DNA of 63,721 bases, filler included, from Octopus bimaculoides (Eukaryota): assembly GCF_001194135.2 (NCBI RefSeq). It is 5 parts of 4 records of this genome, joined end to end, with 100 filler letters (N's around TTAATTAATTAA, not from the genome) between each part and the next. Parts side by side here need not be neighbours in the genome. Positions count along the whole stretch, not along the records: positions 43,185 to 54,568 come from NC_068984.1; 4 more parts are not named here. One strand, given 5' to 3'. The notes under the pieces were generated by a model. It was not told the origin of the DNA, ran no database searches, and worked only from the letters and a program-made list of their open reading frames with translations. Each line of letters starts with the position of its first letter. Positions within the stretch are counted from its first letter, which is position 1. Both the position numbers and the translations under genes were made by a program. This document shows, piece by piece, positions 43,850 through 53,570 of this stretch.

Positions 43850-43950
<101 letters not shown>

Positions 43951-44925
43951 AAACACACACAAACACACACACACACTGCTATTGATCTGTCATCTGGGGG
44001 GTCTCTAGCTATTGCAGACATTTGACTAATTAGCATAAAATTATTCACAAATACTCTCCAAATTAGGACCCATAAACACAAAGTTTCTTTTTTGTATTTG
44101 TTCTGCCTTTTCTAACTCTGCAATAATGGATGGTAACTACGTACTTAATTGTCACCGCTTTTGTGTTCAGTCCTTGCGTCTTGTATTAACCACTACCTCC
44201 AATCCTTCTTCCTGAGAACATCAACCCACTAGTATTCTCTCTCTGTCTACCCCTCTCTCTGTCTCTCAGTCCCCCTCACTCTATGTCCCCCCCTCTCTCC
44301 CCCTCTTTCTCTGTTATGTCGTTACTCCAAATATTAATTTTTAATGCGTTAAGAGGAACATTAATGTCATCAGTTACACCTCTCTCGAAGAGCCAGCGAG
44401 AGGCATAAGCATTGTAGCTTCCTCCTGAGTCAGCAAGTAGGAAGAAATGTACGTAGTGGCAATTAGACGAAATTACAATTTAATTTCATAGGAAATTGTA
44501 TTTACATGCATTATTGAAAATATGATTTAATTAGAGGGCAGTCGTAATCTACAGAATTGTTTTGTTCCAACAAAAATTCATCAGGGGAAATGTAAGTTTT
44601 CAAATTTTTTTTCTTTAATCAGTAGACTTTGATTTTTTTTTTTTACGAGTAGGAGAAAAGGTTTCATTATACGTAAACATTATGAATGCCTTCACTCTTT
44701 CTCAATTCTTAAACTCACAGCGTTTTATAAAGGAAAAGTTGGAAACATTCCATGAACCTTCCCTAGACAGTAATTAACTTTATCTTTAATTTCACTGTAA
44801 CATCTCTCTTTTTAATTGTCTAATGTAATTAGATATACTGGAAATTTACAGATTAAGTCATGCTGAAAGCTCCTATGAACAATGAAATAGTACTATACAT
44901 GCTTACCACTTATTATAAATTGAAT

Positions 44926-45100: not shown

Positions 45101-45368
45101 NNNNNNNNNNNNNNNNNNNNNNNNNNNNNNNNNNNNNNNNNNNNNNNNNNNNNNNNNNNNNNNNNNNNNNNNNNNNNNNNNNNNNNNNNNNNNNNNNNNN
45201 NNNNNNNNNNNNNNNNNNNNNNNNNNNNNNNNNNNNNNNNNNNNNNNNNNNNNNNNNNNNNNNNNNNNNNNNNNNNNNNNNNNNTTCAAAGGATTACAAC
45301 CTGTGTGATCCATATGTAGGAATAAAGTATGCGATTATAACATGCGTTTTCTCCAATCCTTAAATTCT

Positions 45369-45403
<35 letters not shown>

Positions 45404-46074
45404 GGTGGGACATAATGGTGGAACACATTTTTAATGCTACTATCTTGGATTATAAATATACATATATGCATATATATAAGTATATATATGTGTGTGTGCG
45501 TGCGTGTGAGTGTGAGCATGTACGTACGCGCGCGCGCGCGAGTGTGTGTGTCTGTTTGAGTATATTCTTCGAATCTAAATACGAATTTCTAAGCCCGCTT
45601 CACGCTGTGAGGAGATCGTTGCATGCCCTTGTATTACCAGCCATCATGAGCAAGTCAGGCTGGTATAAATTATAATATTCTTCTGCTTGTTGCAGCCTAC
45701 TTTTTTTATACGTATGTTTGCTGGTTACGCTATAAACAAACTTAACTATGCTATGATATCGATGATATAAACCAAAATGAGATAGGTTCACTGTGGAATG
45801 GTATCAATGACATAAATCGAAATCTAAAACATTATGAAATAAATTCAAATAATACGCTTTAAATAAATTTGATTATGGAACAACTTGGAAGATTTAATAT
45901 ATTTAATATAATGAACAAAAAATTAAGGTGATCTCTAAAAATATGCAGGAAAAGAAATAAGAATATTTATAAAACAAAATTTCTACGAATACTGCTTGTT
46001 TGCATAATTACAAGAATGAAACTTAGGGAAATAACTTAACTGGGCCAATGATACAAACTCAGATTATCTGTTAT

Positions 46075-46226
46075 TTTTTACTTGTTCCAGTCATTAGACT
46101 GCGGCCAGGATGAAGCACCATATTGAAAAACTGTTAGTCGAATGAATCGACCCCAGTACTTATTTTTCTAAAGCCTGGTACCTATTCCATTTGTCACATT
46201 TGCTGAACCGTTAAGTTATGAAAACG
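46075..46226 (-). mobile_element. SINE family A 3' half (3' segment of the U6-5S chimera)
   Basis: Minus strand TAACTTAACGGTTCAGCAAA...GGGGTCGATT...GGCCGCAGTCTAATGACTGGAACAAGTAAAA matches the family A 3' half. Confidence 0.75.
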
Positions 46227-46230
46227 CGAG

Positions 46231-46349
46231 ATGCTTACAGCGCTAAGGCTCCCGAGCGGTCACCCAGCGAAATACTATCTAGGCTGAACGTTGCTTAACA
46301 TCGGTTGTCGGACGAGATCCGGTAAATTAAACGTAATATAGCCGTAAGT
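46231..46349 (-). rRNA. 5S rRNA: 5S rRNA gene or pseudogene, full length, divergent
   Basis: ACTTACGGCTATATTACGTTTAATTTACCGGATCTCGTCCGACAACCGATGTTAAGCAACGT...GGGTGACCGCTCGGGAG...GCTGTAAGCAT aligns colinearly with metazoan 5S; helices I and II pair. Confidence 0.85.
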
Positions 46350-46352
46350 AGG

Positions 46353-46457
46353 AAAATATGGAACGCTTCACAAATTTGTGTCATCCTTGCGCAAGTCCCA
46401 TGCTAATCTTCTCTGTGTCGTTCCAGTTTTAGTATATGTATTGCAGAGGCAATAAAC
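46353..46457 (-). ncRNA. U6: U6 snRNA copy, full length (probable pseudogene or variant)
   Basis: CATATACTAAAA.TGGAACGA.ACAGAGAAGATTAGCATGG...GCGCAAGGATGACAC..AAATT.GTGAAGCGTTCCATATTTT; ACAGAGA box and AGC intact; several substitutions and a 2-nt deletion versus canonical U6. Confidence 0.95.
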
Positions 46458-48522
46458 AAGTGGCTTCTACAAGATTTATGGTATTTAAATATATTCAATT
46501 TTTGATCGTGTACAAATGAATGTATGTTTGGTGAAATTTAACAAAGCTGCCACTCATGGAATCCCGTTGATACGTTTCCAATAACTACCATGCAAATTAT
46601 TGGATGATTTGGAGGACATCGAAAACTCCCTGTTAGTAATCTGAGGAATGATAGAAGAAAGTAGGAGTATCTTATTGGTTTTCTGTTACTCTTTTTTACA
46701 CACATAAAATATTTTAAGCTTAACCCTATAAAGTTCTCTGCCTTTCTACAAAAGCGTACCTTATTTCTGAAATAATATCGAAGTATGCATTGCTTCTAAC
46801 ATACTCGCATGACGTGAAGCTGGGGAGGGTAATGGCGTTAGTCACTTAAATCGCTTCCAGAAATCGACTGGTACTTTATATTATCGACCGTGAAATGTTG
46901 AAAGATGAAGTTGACTTCGATGGGATTTGAACTAAGAAAGCAAAAAACCAGAAGGAATTCTGAGAAGCATTTTGTCCGACGTTCTAACGATTCTGCCACA
47001 TATCAATACTTGCTCTTTATCCCCAAACGCAAAGTTTAGTCTGCGACCAAAGACATCGTACGAACCGCCAACCATTCAGACAAATTTTCTGTCTGTTATT
47101 GGCTGATCAGATATATGCAAAAGTTTTTCATACATTGAAATTCAGAAAATACACCTACGTTGTATTTACTGATAAATTACATAAAATGCCAACCAGTGAG
47201 CCAAAACTTTTAATCTATATTAAACAATTAGGTCAAGTGGATAAAGGTTAAACAATTTTTTCGTTTCTTTTCTCATTTTACTGGTTTCTGTCATTGGACT
47301 GCTGCCATTGTAGGGCACCGCCGTCACAAGTACAATCAATCTTATCGATCTCAATATGTGATTGGTATTATATCTATCGGACGAGAGACAAAGTTACCCT
47401 ACGCACCTACGCAATAGCAAAACTCAGAAAATAGAGTCATTAGCAAATTCTACATTGGTATATTTTTCTGACAATCCACCGATGCTGTCATCAACTTCAC
47501 AAAATATTCACCTGAAATTTGATACACGATATTTGTTGTTTATTCTTGCTCATACATTTAATTCTGCATGTGTTACTTAATCTAAATTAGGGATCAGTAA
47601 ACTTATTATGTTACTGTTCCCTTCATTGATAGCTTATCGACTCCCATTATGTGATTTTTTAAAAATGAAATTAAAAAGTATAGCGTGTAGAAAAATTAGT
47701 CAATATATATANNNNNNNNNNNNNNNNNNNNNNNNNNNNNNNNNNNNNNNNNNNNNNNNNNNNNNNNNNNNNNNNNNNNNNNNNNNNNNNNNNNNNNNNN
47801 NNNNNNNNNNNNNNNNNNNNNNNNNNNNNNNNNNNNNNNNNNNNNNNNNNNNNNNNNNNNNNNNNNNNNNNNNNNNNNNNNNNNNNNNNNNNNNNNNNNN
47901 NNNNNNNNNNNNNNNNNNNNNNNNNNNNNNNNNNNNNNNNNNNNNNNNNNNNNNNNNNNNNNNNNNNNNNNNNNNNNNNNNNNNNNNNNNNNNNNNNNNN
48001 NNNNNNNNNNNNNNNNNNNNNNNNNNNNNNNNNNNNNNNNNNNNNNNNNNNNNNNNNNNNNNNNNNNNNNNNNNNNNNNNNNNNNNNNNNNNNNNNNNNN
48101 NNNNNNNNNNNNNNNNNNNNNNNNNNNNNNNNNNNNNNNNNNNNNNNNNNNNNNNNNNNNNNNNNNNNNNNNNNNNNNNNNNNNNNNNNNNNNNNNNNNN
48201 NNNNNNNNNNNNNNNNNNNNNNNNNNNNNNNNNNNNNNNNNNNNNNNNNNNNNNNNNNNNNNNNNNNNNNNNNNNNNNNNNNNNNNNNNNNNNNNNNNNN
48301 NNNNNNNNNNNNNNNNNNNNNNNNNNNNNNNNNNNNNNNNNNNNNNNNNNNNNNNNNNNNNNNNNNNNNNNNNNNNNNNNNNNNNNNNNNNNNNNNNNNN
48401 NNNNNNNNNNNNNNNNNNNNNNNNNNNNNNNNNNNNNNNNNNNNNNNNNNNNNNNNNNNNNNNNNNNNNNNNNNNNNNNNNNNNNNNNNNNNNNNNNNNN
48501 NNNNNNNNNNNNNNNNNNNNNN

Positions 48523-48587
<65 letters not shown>

Positions 48588-49246: not shown

Positions 49247-50179
49247 GGAGAGAAAGTGAGTGTGTGTGAGGTATACTCAAAGAGAAACAGAGAAGTCTGT
49301 TACATCAATGTTAAGGATTTGGCTTTCGTAGAGTGTACGTTTTATACTACATCCTCAGTACTAACGGACAAGCGCCTACATATACACAAACCCACAGAAA
49401 CACACACACACATACACAGAGACAGACACACACGTACACACACATGCACACGCACACATCTATGAACATACTTCCGCATAGATATTCCCATGCAAAAAGA
49501 GACGGACAAGGACTTCATCCACTCGTATGTCTTTCTCTTCTGTTTATTTATTTGTATTCTTTCTAGTATAAAGGAGCTATTTCCTAGCAAAGAAACAAAG
49601 ACAACTTCATTGAAGCTTGGATGAAAACACCTATAATTGCTACGTATCAAACTTCAATAAAGTCTTGCTTATTTCGACTGTTCCACTTACAAATTGTATC
49701 TGTAAAGTTCGTGTTACCAGGACACTTCTTTTGTTAGCTACATAGGTACATGTATGATTTCTTCTATCTTTAAAAAATGTAGAATTTCCTGGACAGGCAT
49801 GGCTGTGGGGTAAGAAATTTGCTTCCCAGAACCATCGTTCCGGGTTCAGTCCCACTGCATGACACCTTAAGTAAATGTCTACTACTATAGCCTCGGGCCG
49901 ACCAAAGCTTTGTGAGTGGATTTGGTGCACGGAAAATGAAAGAAGCCCGTCGTGTATNNNNNNNNNNNNNNNNNNNNNNNNNNNNNNNNNNNNNNNNNNN
50001 NNNNNNNNNNNNNNNNNNNNNNNNNNNNNNNNNNNNNNNNNNNNNNNNNNNNNNNNNNNNNNNNNNNNNNNNNNNNNNNNNNNNNNNNNNNNNNNNNNNN
50101 NNNNNNNNNNNNNNNNNNNNNNNNNNNNNNNNNNNNNNNNNNNNNNNNNNNNNNNNNNNNNNNNNNNNNNNNNNNNNAT

Positions 50180-50420: not shown

Positions 50421-50852
50421 GAAGAACTACCTGCATAAAAAAAGACGTCAGAAACATACCTTTAGTTCCTATAAGTGATTTCTACCATTAGCTCTATAAG
50501 TGATTTCTGCCATTAGTTCCTATGAATGATTTCTGCCATTCTGTTAAAATGTCTTATTGATGTGTTTGATTTCTTTCTTTCCCTGGTGAGAAGATTGCAT
50601 CGTTTTACAACATTTTATTCCTTCTGGAATAATACAAATCTTGTCTTGGAAACATATGTCGGAAGTAAAAGAATTTGTATAACACTTGCCTTTAACTGCA
50701 TTTATTTACTCATCTATCTATATTATACAAAATATTTCACCTTAACCCAGAATTTCTCCCTTTATAAATAGGTTGTTACATCCTTGTTACCTGTGTGAAT
50801 GTTTGCTACTCTGGTAACTGTTTATTGATTTTTTCCGTGTTATTTGTAAACA

Positions 50853-50891
<39 letters not shown>

Positions 50892-51304
50892 CACACATAC
50901 ATACATACATATGTATTTATGTATGTATATATATATATATGTATGTATATATATATATATATATATAAGCACGTACTTAGACACGTATAAATAATCGAAA
51001 GCTTCCTCACACACGTTCGCACTCACGCACAAGCGAATACTTGAACACTAAACAGACACATTCACACAGAACATAAGATCAGTGCATACACTTTAATGTA
51101 TGTACACATCACTGTATTCACATATTTACAAATCCATGGAACTGTTGCCTTAACTCAAAGACAGTTGTCACTCTGTCACAGACTGGCTCGAATTCCATGA
51201 TGAAAAACTTAGATCAATCTAAAGGAAAACAAATACATTCAAACATATATCGTATGAAACTTGAGTCGCGTGAATAATAACCAGTTTAAATAAACCATAT
51301 ATTC

Positions 51305-51785
<481 letters not shown>

Positions 51786-53239: not shown

Positions 53240-53570
53240 CAGATCCAGTTTGTCACAATTGGAGGCGCGTGGCTTAGTGGTTAGGGTATTGGACTCATGG
53301 TGGTAGGAATGTGGTTTCGATTCTAGAGAGTCATGCCAACCGGTTTCTTGGTTTCATGCTGTATATATTCTGCACCTGGACTGGACGCCGTTCCATCGTG
53401 GGATTACTCATTTTTTAAAACTGAATGTGCTGGAACAACTGAAATGGAATGTCTTGCTCAAGAACACAACGCGTCACCCGGTCCAGGAATCGAAACCACA
53501 TTCCTACTACCATGAGTCCAACATCCTAACCACTAAGCCACGCGCCTCCAAGTGTGAGCGACTGGATCTG
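53240..53570. repeat. Inverted duplication of a SINE C head plus flank (53240-53323 / 53487-53570)
   Basis: About 77/84 identity, including non-SINE flank CAGATCCAGT. Confidence 0.85.

What the first reader, a model, noticed from the sequence alone, without database searches (positions are those of the whole stretch)
46075..46457. Tripartite U6 snRNA - 5S rRNA - SINE chimera on one strand
Seen: on the minus strand a full-length U6 ends in TTTT and is followed after only 3 nt (CCT) by a full-length 5S rRNA, then ~5 nt later by the 3' half and tail of SINE family A. All three parts are co-oriented. Established: bipartite U6-retroelement chimeras are known in vertebrates, arising by RT template switching or RNA ligation, with the small RNA full-length at the 5' end. 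5S-snRNA gene linkages also exist in some invertebrates. Inference: two successive template jumps (SINE -> 5S 3' end -> U6 3' end) by a LINE RT explain this best. Alternatives are a novel SINE with a U6+5S double Pol III head, or a U6-5S read-through gene. No TSD was found.
Basis: partly seen in the sequence, partly recalled or inferred. Interest (0 to 1): 0.85.

Follow-up and report, generated by a model that had tools for sequence, protein, structure and literature searches.

The report
Dead U6–5S–SINE fused retrocopy
A decayed, full-length copy of U6 spliceosomal RNA is fused head-to-tail to a full-length 5S ribosomal RNA copy and then to the back half of a local SINE, most likely a one-off by-product of a retrotransposon's reverse transcriptase hopping between RNA templates; this kind of chimera is already known, so it is a curiosity and not a new class.

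Summary
On the minus strand Rfam finds a complete U6 (46455..46352, 81.9 bits) and a complete 5S rRNA (46349..46232, 69.3 bits), 3 nt (CCT) apart. After a linker of about 6–13 nt comes the last ~155 nt, with tail, of a SINE that has other copies in the same piece (78% identity). All three modules point the same way and lie in one N-free contig.

Both small RNAs are pseudogene-grade. No target-site duplication, tandem repetition or second copy is detectable in the 11.4 kb available.

Best reading: a dead composite retrocopy from one LINE-mediated insertion. Reverse transcription was primed on the SINE/LINE-type tail, and the RT then jumped to a 5S RNA and, from its 5' end, to the 3' end of U6. 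Almost as likely, the 5S–SINE join already existed as a 5S-headed SINE and only U6 was added by a jump.

No cephalopod-type sequence was reachable in any collection, so junction copy number, the decisive test, could not be measured.

Bipartite U6/LINE, U6/SINE and 5S/LINE chimeras and tripartite chimeras (fungus, mouse, human) are already published.

The parts
46353..46457 (-). Full-length U6 snRNA copy, pseudogene-grade, ending in TTTT (46356..46353)
   Evidence: Rfam RF00026, 81.9 bits, model 1-105/105. 8 of 63 Rfam-invariant positions are changed. 13 of 102 positions identical in human and fly differ, including GGCCCCUGC -> GGGACUUGC with no compensating change on the other strand of the internal stem-loop.
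46350..46352 (-). 3-nt junction CCT between the U6 U-tract and 5S position 1
   Evidence: Read directly. Rfam assigns 46352 to U6 model position 105, as a mismatch.
46232..46349 (-). Full-length 5S rRNA copy, pseudogene-grade
   Evidence: Rfam RF00001, 69.3 bits, model 1-120/120. 6 of 34 model pairs are non-standard. 27 of 94 positions identical in human and fly differ.
46219..46231 (-). Linker TCTCGCGTTTTCA between 5S and clear SINE homology. It holds a T4 run (46224..46221). Its 3' part (CGCGTTTTC) may already be SINE sequence.
   Evidence: The local alignment to the SINE starts at 46218. There is a weak match of CGCGTTTTC to GTGTTTAT/GTGTTTAC of the SINE.
46064..46218 (-). 3' ~155 nt of the local tRNA-type SINE (5'-truncated) with a degenerate 8-nt-repeat tail. 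It contains a T5 run (46130..46126).
   Evidence: 78% ungapped identity to 51461..51307 of the full-length copy. Repeat families D12 and D14, alignment A1, T runs.

Best explanation
This is a non-functional composite retrocopy laid down in a single LINE-mediated insertion.

1. The partner LINE's reverse transcriptase started on an RNA carrying the SINE/LINE-type 3' tail and copied about 155 nt of SINE.
2. It then switched to the 3' end of a 5S rRNA, or a 5S variant transcript, and copied that to its 5' end.
3. It added about 3 untemplated nucleotides and jumped end-to-end onto the U-tract at the 3' end of U6 snRNA, which it copied completely.
4. The cDNA was then joined to the chromosome.

Shown: the three modules, their completeness, their orientation, the short junctions and their decayed state. 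Inferred: the order of events, the enzyme, and that both joins were made in one event. The locus has since decayed neutrally and does nothing today.
For: - U6 and 5S are complete and co-oriented, 3 nt apart, followed by a 5'-truncated SINE 3' half with its tail.
- U6 keeps exactly its terminal T4, as expected for a copy of the mature RNA.
- U6 has no tail module of its own downstream of 46064: no repeat family there and no other similarity. In a genome whose SINEs share a specific LINE-type tail, U6 could only have been carried in on the SINE tail.
- Decay levels are compatible with one age. U6 differs at 12.7% of positions invariant between human and fly. The SINE part is about 11-16% from its family (78% pairwise; 84% to a remembered consensus). 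5S has 6 of 34 pairs broken.
- The architecture matches published chimeras: a full-length sense U6 at the 5' end, double jumps, and U6-SINE chimeras made by stringent L2-type LINEs with TSDs of only 1-9 bp. That also explains why no long TSD is found.
- My own back-of-envelope estimate, from assumed copy numbers, is that independent insertions landing within a few nt of each other in the same orientation are expected well below once per genome.
Against: - No target-site duplication longer than 7 nt, and none at the element's ends, so a single insertion event is not proven.
- 5S differs from human/fly-invariant positions twice as often as U6 (28.7% against 12.7%). This may mean the 5S template was not the canonical rRNA but a 5S-derived repeat.
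- Giant squid carries about 24,000 5S-derived loci thought to be SINEs, so a pre-existing 5S-headed SINE is a realistic template.
- Junction copy number is unknown.
- A TATA-like motif sits at -36..-25 of U6, though such motifs are common here.
Confidence: 0.42

Rival explanations
1. One jump only. The template was an RNA of an existing 5S-headed SINE (SINE3 type: 5S head joined to the tRNA-SINE 3' half and tail). The RT copied it to its 5' end and then jumped onto U6. The locus would then be an ordinary bipartite U6-SINE chimera.
For: - The 5S module is complete from position 1, and the 3 extra nt fit an end-to-end jump or a transcript starting 3 nt upstream.
- No clear U-tail follows 5S: AAGCATCT.
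- 5S is more diverged in sequence than U6 yet still largely paired, as expected for a head that evolved inside a repeat family.
- Box C is better kept than the 5' third (my own reading of the alignment printed).
- 5S-derived loci are very abundant in at least one cephalopod.
- 5S heads acquired by template switching are documented.
Against: - No second copy of a 5S-SINE join in the 11.4 kb.
- This copy has T4 at the join and T5 inside the SINE part, which would stop Pol III, although single mutations could have created them.
- No 5S-headed SINE is reported for octopus in the papers read.
Confidence: 0.3
2. Separate events that happen to abut. Either a 5S-SINE element inserted just behind an older U6 copy (a U6 gene relic with its own TATA box, or an older retrocopy), or the reverse.
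For: - TATA-like TATATTTAAATA at 46493..46482, that is -36..-25 of the U6 start, is where animal U6 genes carry their TATA box.
- No TSD brackets the whole unit.
Against: - The motif class occurs at about 1.5% of positions in this AT-rich piece, so roughly a 15-20% chance in such a window.
- U6 is mutated at 8 of 63 invariant positions.
- The 3-nt, same-orientation, end-to-end abutment of two complete RNAs is very improbable for independent insertions.
- No internal TSD or tail lies between the modules.
- U6 has no tail of its own.
Confidence: 0.12
3. A propagating composite element or gene unit: a SINE family with a U6+5S double head, or a U6-5S tandem or read-through gene.
For: - All parts are Pol III-type RNAs in one orientation.
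- The 5S internal promoter region is partly kept.
- Linked 5S-snRNA gene arrays exist in some invertebrates (my own knowledge).
Against: - The U6 promoter is external and would not be copied (established knowledge).
- T4 directly after U6, T4 after 5S and T5 in the SINE part would each terminate Pol III.
- Both RNAs are pseudogene-grade.
- A 3-nt spacer leaves no room for a promoter.
- No tandem or second copy in the piece.
Confidence: 0.06
4. Assembly artefact: the contig joins reads from separate U6, 5S and SINE loci.
For: The piece is a gapped draft scaffold with three N runs and many microsatellites.
Against: - The element lies inside one N-free stretch, 45285-47711.
- The three modules share no sequence that could bridge a graph.
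- Each is individually diverged from its family, unlike collapsed consensus repeats.
Confidence: 0.04

Closest known systems
Tripartite chimeric retroelements from double template switching (Gogvadze et al. 2007, PMC2104539: M. grisea WEIRD-MgSINE-MGL; mouse B2-U6-L1; two human cases)
   Same: Three different RNA copies are fused directly in one orientation. A retroelement 3' end sits at the 3' side and a complete non-coding RNA at the 5' side. They are explained by two template jumps of a LINE RT.
   Different: - Here the two 5' modules are both Pol III small RNAs (U6 and 5S).
- The 3' module is a SINE fragment, not a LINE.
- The host is an invertebrate, probably an octopus.
- No TSD is visible, whereas the fungal and mouse cases have 14-16 bp TSDs.
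Bipartite U6/LINE and U6/SINE chimeric pseudogenes (Doucet et al. 2015, PMC4476161; Moldovan et al. 2019, PMC6789731; 2025 preprint PMC11838501)
   Same: - A full-length sense U6 with its U-tract sits at the 5' end of a 5'-truncated retroelement.
- They also occur with stringent L2-type LINEs and their SINEs (platypus Mon-1, AnolisSINE2), where TSDs are only 1-9 bp.
   Different: - A complete 5S copy is intercalated between U6 and the SINE.
- The RtcB ligation route needs a 5'-OH acceptor. An intact 5S 5' end should carry a triphosphate, so a template jump fits this junction better (inference).
5S rRNA/LINE-1 chimeric insertions (PMC11838501)
   Same: 5S rRNA is a recurrent partner in LINE-made chimeras: 10.5% of 253 human cases.
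   Different: Human 5S segments are mostly antisense and truncated at positions 46 or 90. Here 5S is sense and complete.
SINE3 / 5S-headed SINEs, and composite 5S+tRNA SINE heads (Kapitonov & Jurka 2003 and Nishihara et al. 2006, as cited in PMC4824008, PMC4758252 and PMC10886601)
   Same: A 5S-derived head is joined to a body and LINE-type tail taken from another SINE. [quoted passage not shown]
   Different: - Family status is untested here.
- This copy carries Pol III terminators inside and an extra U6 in front, which no described SINE has.
Linked 5S rDNA-snRNA gene arrays (bivalves, crustaceans, fishes; own knowledge)
   Same: 5S and snRNA sequences lie on one strand close together.
   Different: Those are tandemly repeated functional genes with spacers of hundreds of bp and their own promoters. 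Here there is a single decayed copy with a 3-nt spacer, attached to a SINE tail.

Membership tests
U6 spliceosomal RNA (RF00026) | Covariance-model score above the curated threshold over the full model | tested here: met
   81.9 bits against 44, model 1-105/105
U6 spliceosomal RNA (RF00026) | Functional gene: invariant core and internal stem-loop intact | tested here: not met
   8 of 63 invariant positions changed. GGCCCC -> GGGACU is uncompensated, and there is a 2-nt deletion. It is a pseudogene.
U6 spliceosomal RNA (RF00026) | External promoter (PSE plus TATA near -30) | tested here: inconclusive
   A TATA-like run sits at -36..-25, but such motifs occur at about 1.5% of positions here. The cephalopod PSE consensus was not available.
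5S ribosomal RNA (RF00001) | Covariance-model score above the threshold over the full model | tested here: met
   69.3 bits against 38, model 1-120/120
5S ribosomal RNA (RF00001) | Functional gene: helices intact, terminator directly after position ~120, tandem array | tested here: not met
   6 of 34 pairs non-standard. 27 of 94 human=fly positions differ. The T4 run starts 8 nt after the end. Single copy in the piece.
LINE-mediated chimeric retrogene (template-switch type) | Copies of different cellular RNAs fused directly, in the same orientation | tested here: met
   U6, then 3 nt, then 5S, then 6-13 nt, then SINE, all on the minus strand
LINE-mediated chimeric retrogene (template-switch type) | 3' module is a 5'-truncated LINE or SINE ending in its tail; 5' module is a full-length small RNA | tested here: met
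   The SINE part covers only the last ~155 nt of a ~480-nt element and ends in a degenerate 8-nt-repeat tail. U6 is complete.
LINE-mediated chimeric retrogene (template-switch type) | Whole unit flanked by a target-site duplication | tested here: not met
   No direct repeat at the ends. The best match is a 7-mer, 17 and ~50 nt away from the ends. This is expected to be weak for old insertions and for stringent LINEs, where TSDs are 1-9 bp.
LINE-mediated chimeric retrogene (template-switch type) | Junctions unique in the genome (each chimera is an independent event) | not testable with these tools
   No collection held this genome. Scans and protein look-ups found nothing.
SINE3 (5S-headed SINE) | 5S-derived head with internal promoter, joined to a LINE-type tail | tested here: inconclusive
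   Head and tail are present. Box C has 2 of 15 conserved positions changed, while box A, the intermediate element (IE) and the 5' third are more damaged (my own count from the alignment printed).
SINE3 (5S-headed SINE) | Multi-copy family with a shared head/body junction; no internal Pol III terminator | not testable with these tools
   Copy number is unknown. This copy has T4 and T5 runs, which may be secondary.
Local tRNA-type SINE (3' module) | Sequence homology to other copies, including the shared tail | tested here: met
   78% identity over 151 ungapped columns to the copy at 51461..51307. The tail is also shared with the element at 47440..47276.
Linked 5S-snRNA gene array | Tandem repetition of functional units with promoter-bearing spacers | tested here: not met
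   One copy only in 11.4 kb, a 3-nt spacer, and both RNAs decayed.

The most novel reading that the evidence does not exclude
The unit is not a one-off but a transcribed, multi-copy element: a SINE lineage whose head is a complete 5S preceded by a complete U6. Alternatively, it is a SINE birth caught in the act, in which a stringent mollusc LINE stitches Pol III RNAs onto an existing SINE tail by serial end-to-end jumps. It would be the first retroposon family to carry U6.
Probability: 0.06. Interest if true: 0.65.

Novelty: new member of a known kind. Interest (0 to 1): 0.3.

Why it matters
If it is a single-event chimera, it extends serial template jumping by LINE reverse transcriptases to a lophotrochozoan and to a LINE that recognises a specific SINE-type tail. 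Until now it has been documented in mammals, a lizard and a fungus. The locus also shows in one place the raw step by which SINEs acquire new Pol III heads, a 5S placed in front of an older SINE body. That is a useful illustration for the biology of the SINE-rich octopus genomes, but it does not change the current picture. The locus itself is a decayed pseudogene with no expected function.

Tried and rejected
- Other copies in public data. A metagenome scan with a U6-core/5S-core pattern gave 6 loci, none with U6 or 5S by Rfam. Viral and prokaryote-genome scans with the SINE tail gave 0 hits.
- Reaching octopus-type contigs through the protein collections. A junction-spanning 55-aa translation and a SINE-head translation shared no words with any entry. 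This route is closed, and a negative there says nothing about copy number.
- A sensitive Rfam pass over the piece found only low-complexity miRNA-like noise besides U6 and 5S. ARAGORN found no tRNA.
- The TSD search was negative.
- No LINE ORF or other coding remnant that could name the partner LINE is visible among the stop-free stretches of the piece (read by eye, no Pfam scan was run).
- A full-text search for the SINE tail sequence in papers found nothing relevant.
- I first read the 12 'v' marks of the 5S alignment as 12-13 broken pairs. Recounting shows 6 of 34. This weakens my earlier argument that 5S is much older or more diverged than U6.
- A U6/5S read-through gene, a tandem gene unit and a misassembly were considered and ranked low, for the reasons given under the rivals.

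Full report
**Observation.** Rfam at curated thresholds finds exactly two RNAs in the 11.4-kb piece, both on the minus strand and both covering their whole models:
- U6: 46455..46352, 81.9 bits, E=4.9e-20, model 1-105/105.
- 5S rRNA: 46349..46232, 69.3 bits, E=2.7e-13, model 1-120/120.

Alignment with human and fly U6 puts the first G of U6 at 46457. Reading directly, U6 ends in TTTT (46356..46353), then comes CCT (46352..46350), and 5S starts at 46349.

Downstream, 46218..46064 aligns with 51461..51307 of a full-length SINE in the same piece at 78% ungapped identity (also families D12 and D14). The stretch between them, TCTCGCGTTTTCA (46231..46219), may be partly SINE: CGCGTTTTC against GTGTTTAT. 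The 5S-to-SINE gap is therefore 6-13 nt and not about 5, and the tail runs to about 46064 and not 46075. These are minor corrections.

**State of the modules.** Neither small RNA can be functional.
- U6 is changed at 8 of 63 positions that Rfam treats as invariant, and at 13 of 102 positions identical in human and fly. These include GGCCCCUGC -> GGGACUUGC, with no compensating change on the other strand of the internal stem-loop, and a 2-nt deletion.
- 5S has 6 of 34 model pairs non-standard and differs at 27 of 94 positions identical in human and fly.
- The SINE part is 78% identical to the other copy, and 84% identical to a 3'-half consensus I recalled for octopus SINEs. That consensus is closer to both copies than they are to each other. 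This is a lead that the organism is an octopus, not a test.
- Three T runs of four or more lie inside the unit: after U6, at the 5S/SINE join, and inside the SINE part.

**Context.**
- The unit lies inside one N-free contig, 45285-47711, of a gapped draft scaffold.
- The piece holds a full-length copy of the same SINE on the minus strand, about 51785..51300, with a tRNA-like head, an internal (TA)n(TG)n microsatellite and the 3' half. A second head lies at 49800-49957.
- An unrelated element at 47440..47276 shares only the last ~58 nt. That shared tail is what a stringent LINE would recognise (inference).
- No protein-coding sequence or LINE ORF is visible among the ORFs and stop-free stretches of the piece, read by eye without a domain scan.

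**Tests of the alternatives.**
- No target-site duplication brackets the unit. The best direct repeat is a 7-mer well away from both ends.
- No second U6, 5S or junction copy exists in the piece, even at E<=5, so there is no tandem array.
- Downstream of 46064 there is no further tail module. U6 has no vehicle of its own and must have ridden in on the SINE tail, unless it is a DNA-level gene relic.
- The only hint of a gene relic is a TATA-like run at -36..-25 of U6. Comparable motifs occur at about 1.5% of positions in this AT-rich DNA, so it is weak evidence.
- A Pol III read-through or double-head SINE is unlikely. The U6 promoter is external (established knowledge), and three terminator-like T runs interrupt the unit.

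**Mechanism.** The best-supported reading is one LINE-mediated insertion. Priming occurred on the SINE/LINE-type tail and about 155 nt of SINE were copied. The RT then switched to the 3' end of a 5S RNA and copied it to its 5' end. It added about 3 untemplated nt and made an end-to-end jump to the U-tract of U6, which it copied in full.

The RtcB ligation route described for U6/L1 needs a 5'-OH acceptor, and an intact 5S 5' end should not offer one. A jump therefore fits the U6/5S junction better (inference from established RtcB biochemistry; the paper, PMC6789731, surfaced).

Nearly as likely, the 5S-SINE join pre-existed as a 5S-headed SINE and only U6 was added. In favour of that:
- No clear U-tail follows 5S.
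- 5S differs from the human/fly-invariant sequence more than U6 does, while remaining mostly paired.
- About 24,000 5S-derived loci are reported in the giant squid.

I give 0.42 to the double jump and 0.30 to the single jump onto a 5S-headed SINE. The rest goes to abutting independent events (0.12), a propagating composite or gene unit (0.06) and misassembly (0.04).

**Comparison with what is known.**
- Full-length sense U6 at the 5' end of 5'-truncated LINEs is the classic chimera, and 5S/L1 chimeras make up 10.5% of a 253-case human catalogue, though mostly antisense and truncated.
- U6-SINE and U6-L2 chimeras made by stringent LINEs, with TSDs of only 1-9 bp, are described in platypus and lizard.
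- Tripartite chimeras explained by double template switches are described in M. grisea, mouse (B2-U6-L1) and human.
- 5S heads acquired by SINEs through template switching are documented.
- Octopus genomes are dominated by tRNA-Core and tRNA-Deu SINEs and by RTE-BovB expansions.

The particular combination U6-5S-SINE and the molluscan host appear undescribed in the papers I could search. The kind of object is known.

**What could not be done.** The decisive measurement is the genomic copy number of the two junctions, together with an orthologous empty site. It was out of reach because none of the searchable collections contains this genome or relatives.

**Verdict.** The feature is real and correctly described. 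It is most likely a dead template-jump chimera: a new member of a known kind, of moderate-to-low interest (0.3).

Noticed in passing
window 51300-51785 (minus strand): A full-length copy of the SINE whose 3' half is in the chimera. It has a tRNA-like head with a CORE-like stretch, then an internal (TA)n(TG)n microsatellite (51510-51626), then the 3' half and a (TAAAAGAA)3 tail. ARAGORN and Rfam do not recognise the head as tRNA.
   Followed up: partly
window 49800-49957 (+ strand), N gap 49958-50177: A second copy of the SINE head in the opposite orientation (80% identity to the 51.7-kb head), cut off by an assembly gap.
   Followed up: partly
window 47276-47440 (minus strand): An element that shares only the last ~58 nt (GGCGGTGC...ATGGC.GCAGTC.AATGAC.GAAAC.AGTAAAA) with the SINE. 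It is either a different SINE family or a 5'-truncated 3' end of the partner LINE. The shared module looks like the RT recognition tail.
   Followed up: partly
window 46482-46493 (minus strand): TATA-like TATATTTAAATA at -36..-25 relative to the U6 start, where animal U6 genes carry a TATA box. Similar motifs occur at about 1.5% of positions in the piece, so it may be chance.
   Followed up: partly
window 53240-53323 and 53487-53570: An 84-nt inverted repeat, 92% complementary, with a 163-nt loop. It is unrelated to the SINE above and could be a foldback or MITE-like element, or two inverted copies of another tRNA-type repeat.
   Followed up: no
window 50459-50540: Three tandem copies of a ~26-nt unit (CCTTTAGTTCCTATAAGTGATTTCTACCATT-like).
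   Followed up: no
window 46232-46349: 5S helix I reads CUUAC/GUAAG where human 5S has CUAC/GUAG (fly AAC/GUU). Overall, 28 of 34 pairs survive despite 29% change at human=fly positions. This suggests the source was a structurally sound lineage-specific or variant 5S, not a heavily decayed copy.
   Followed up: partly
window 45101-45284, 47712-48522, 49958-50177; microsatellites e.g. 43852-43975 (CA)n, 48523-48580 (TA)n: The piece is a gapped draft scaffold. N runs are flanked by (TA)n, which produce spurious long 'inverted repeats' and miRNA-like Rfam hits.
   Followed up: yes
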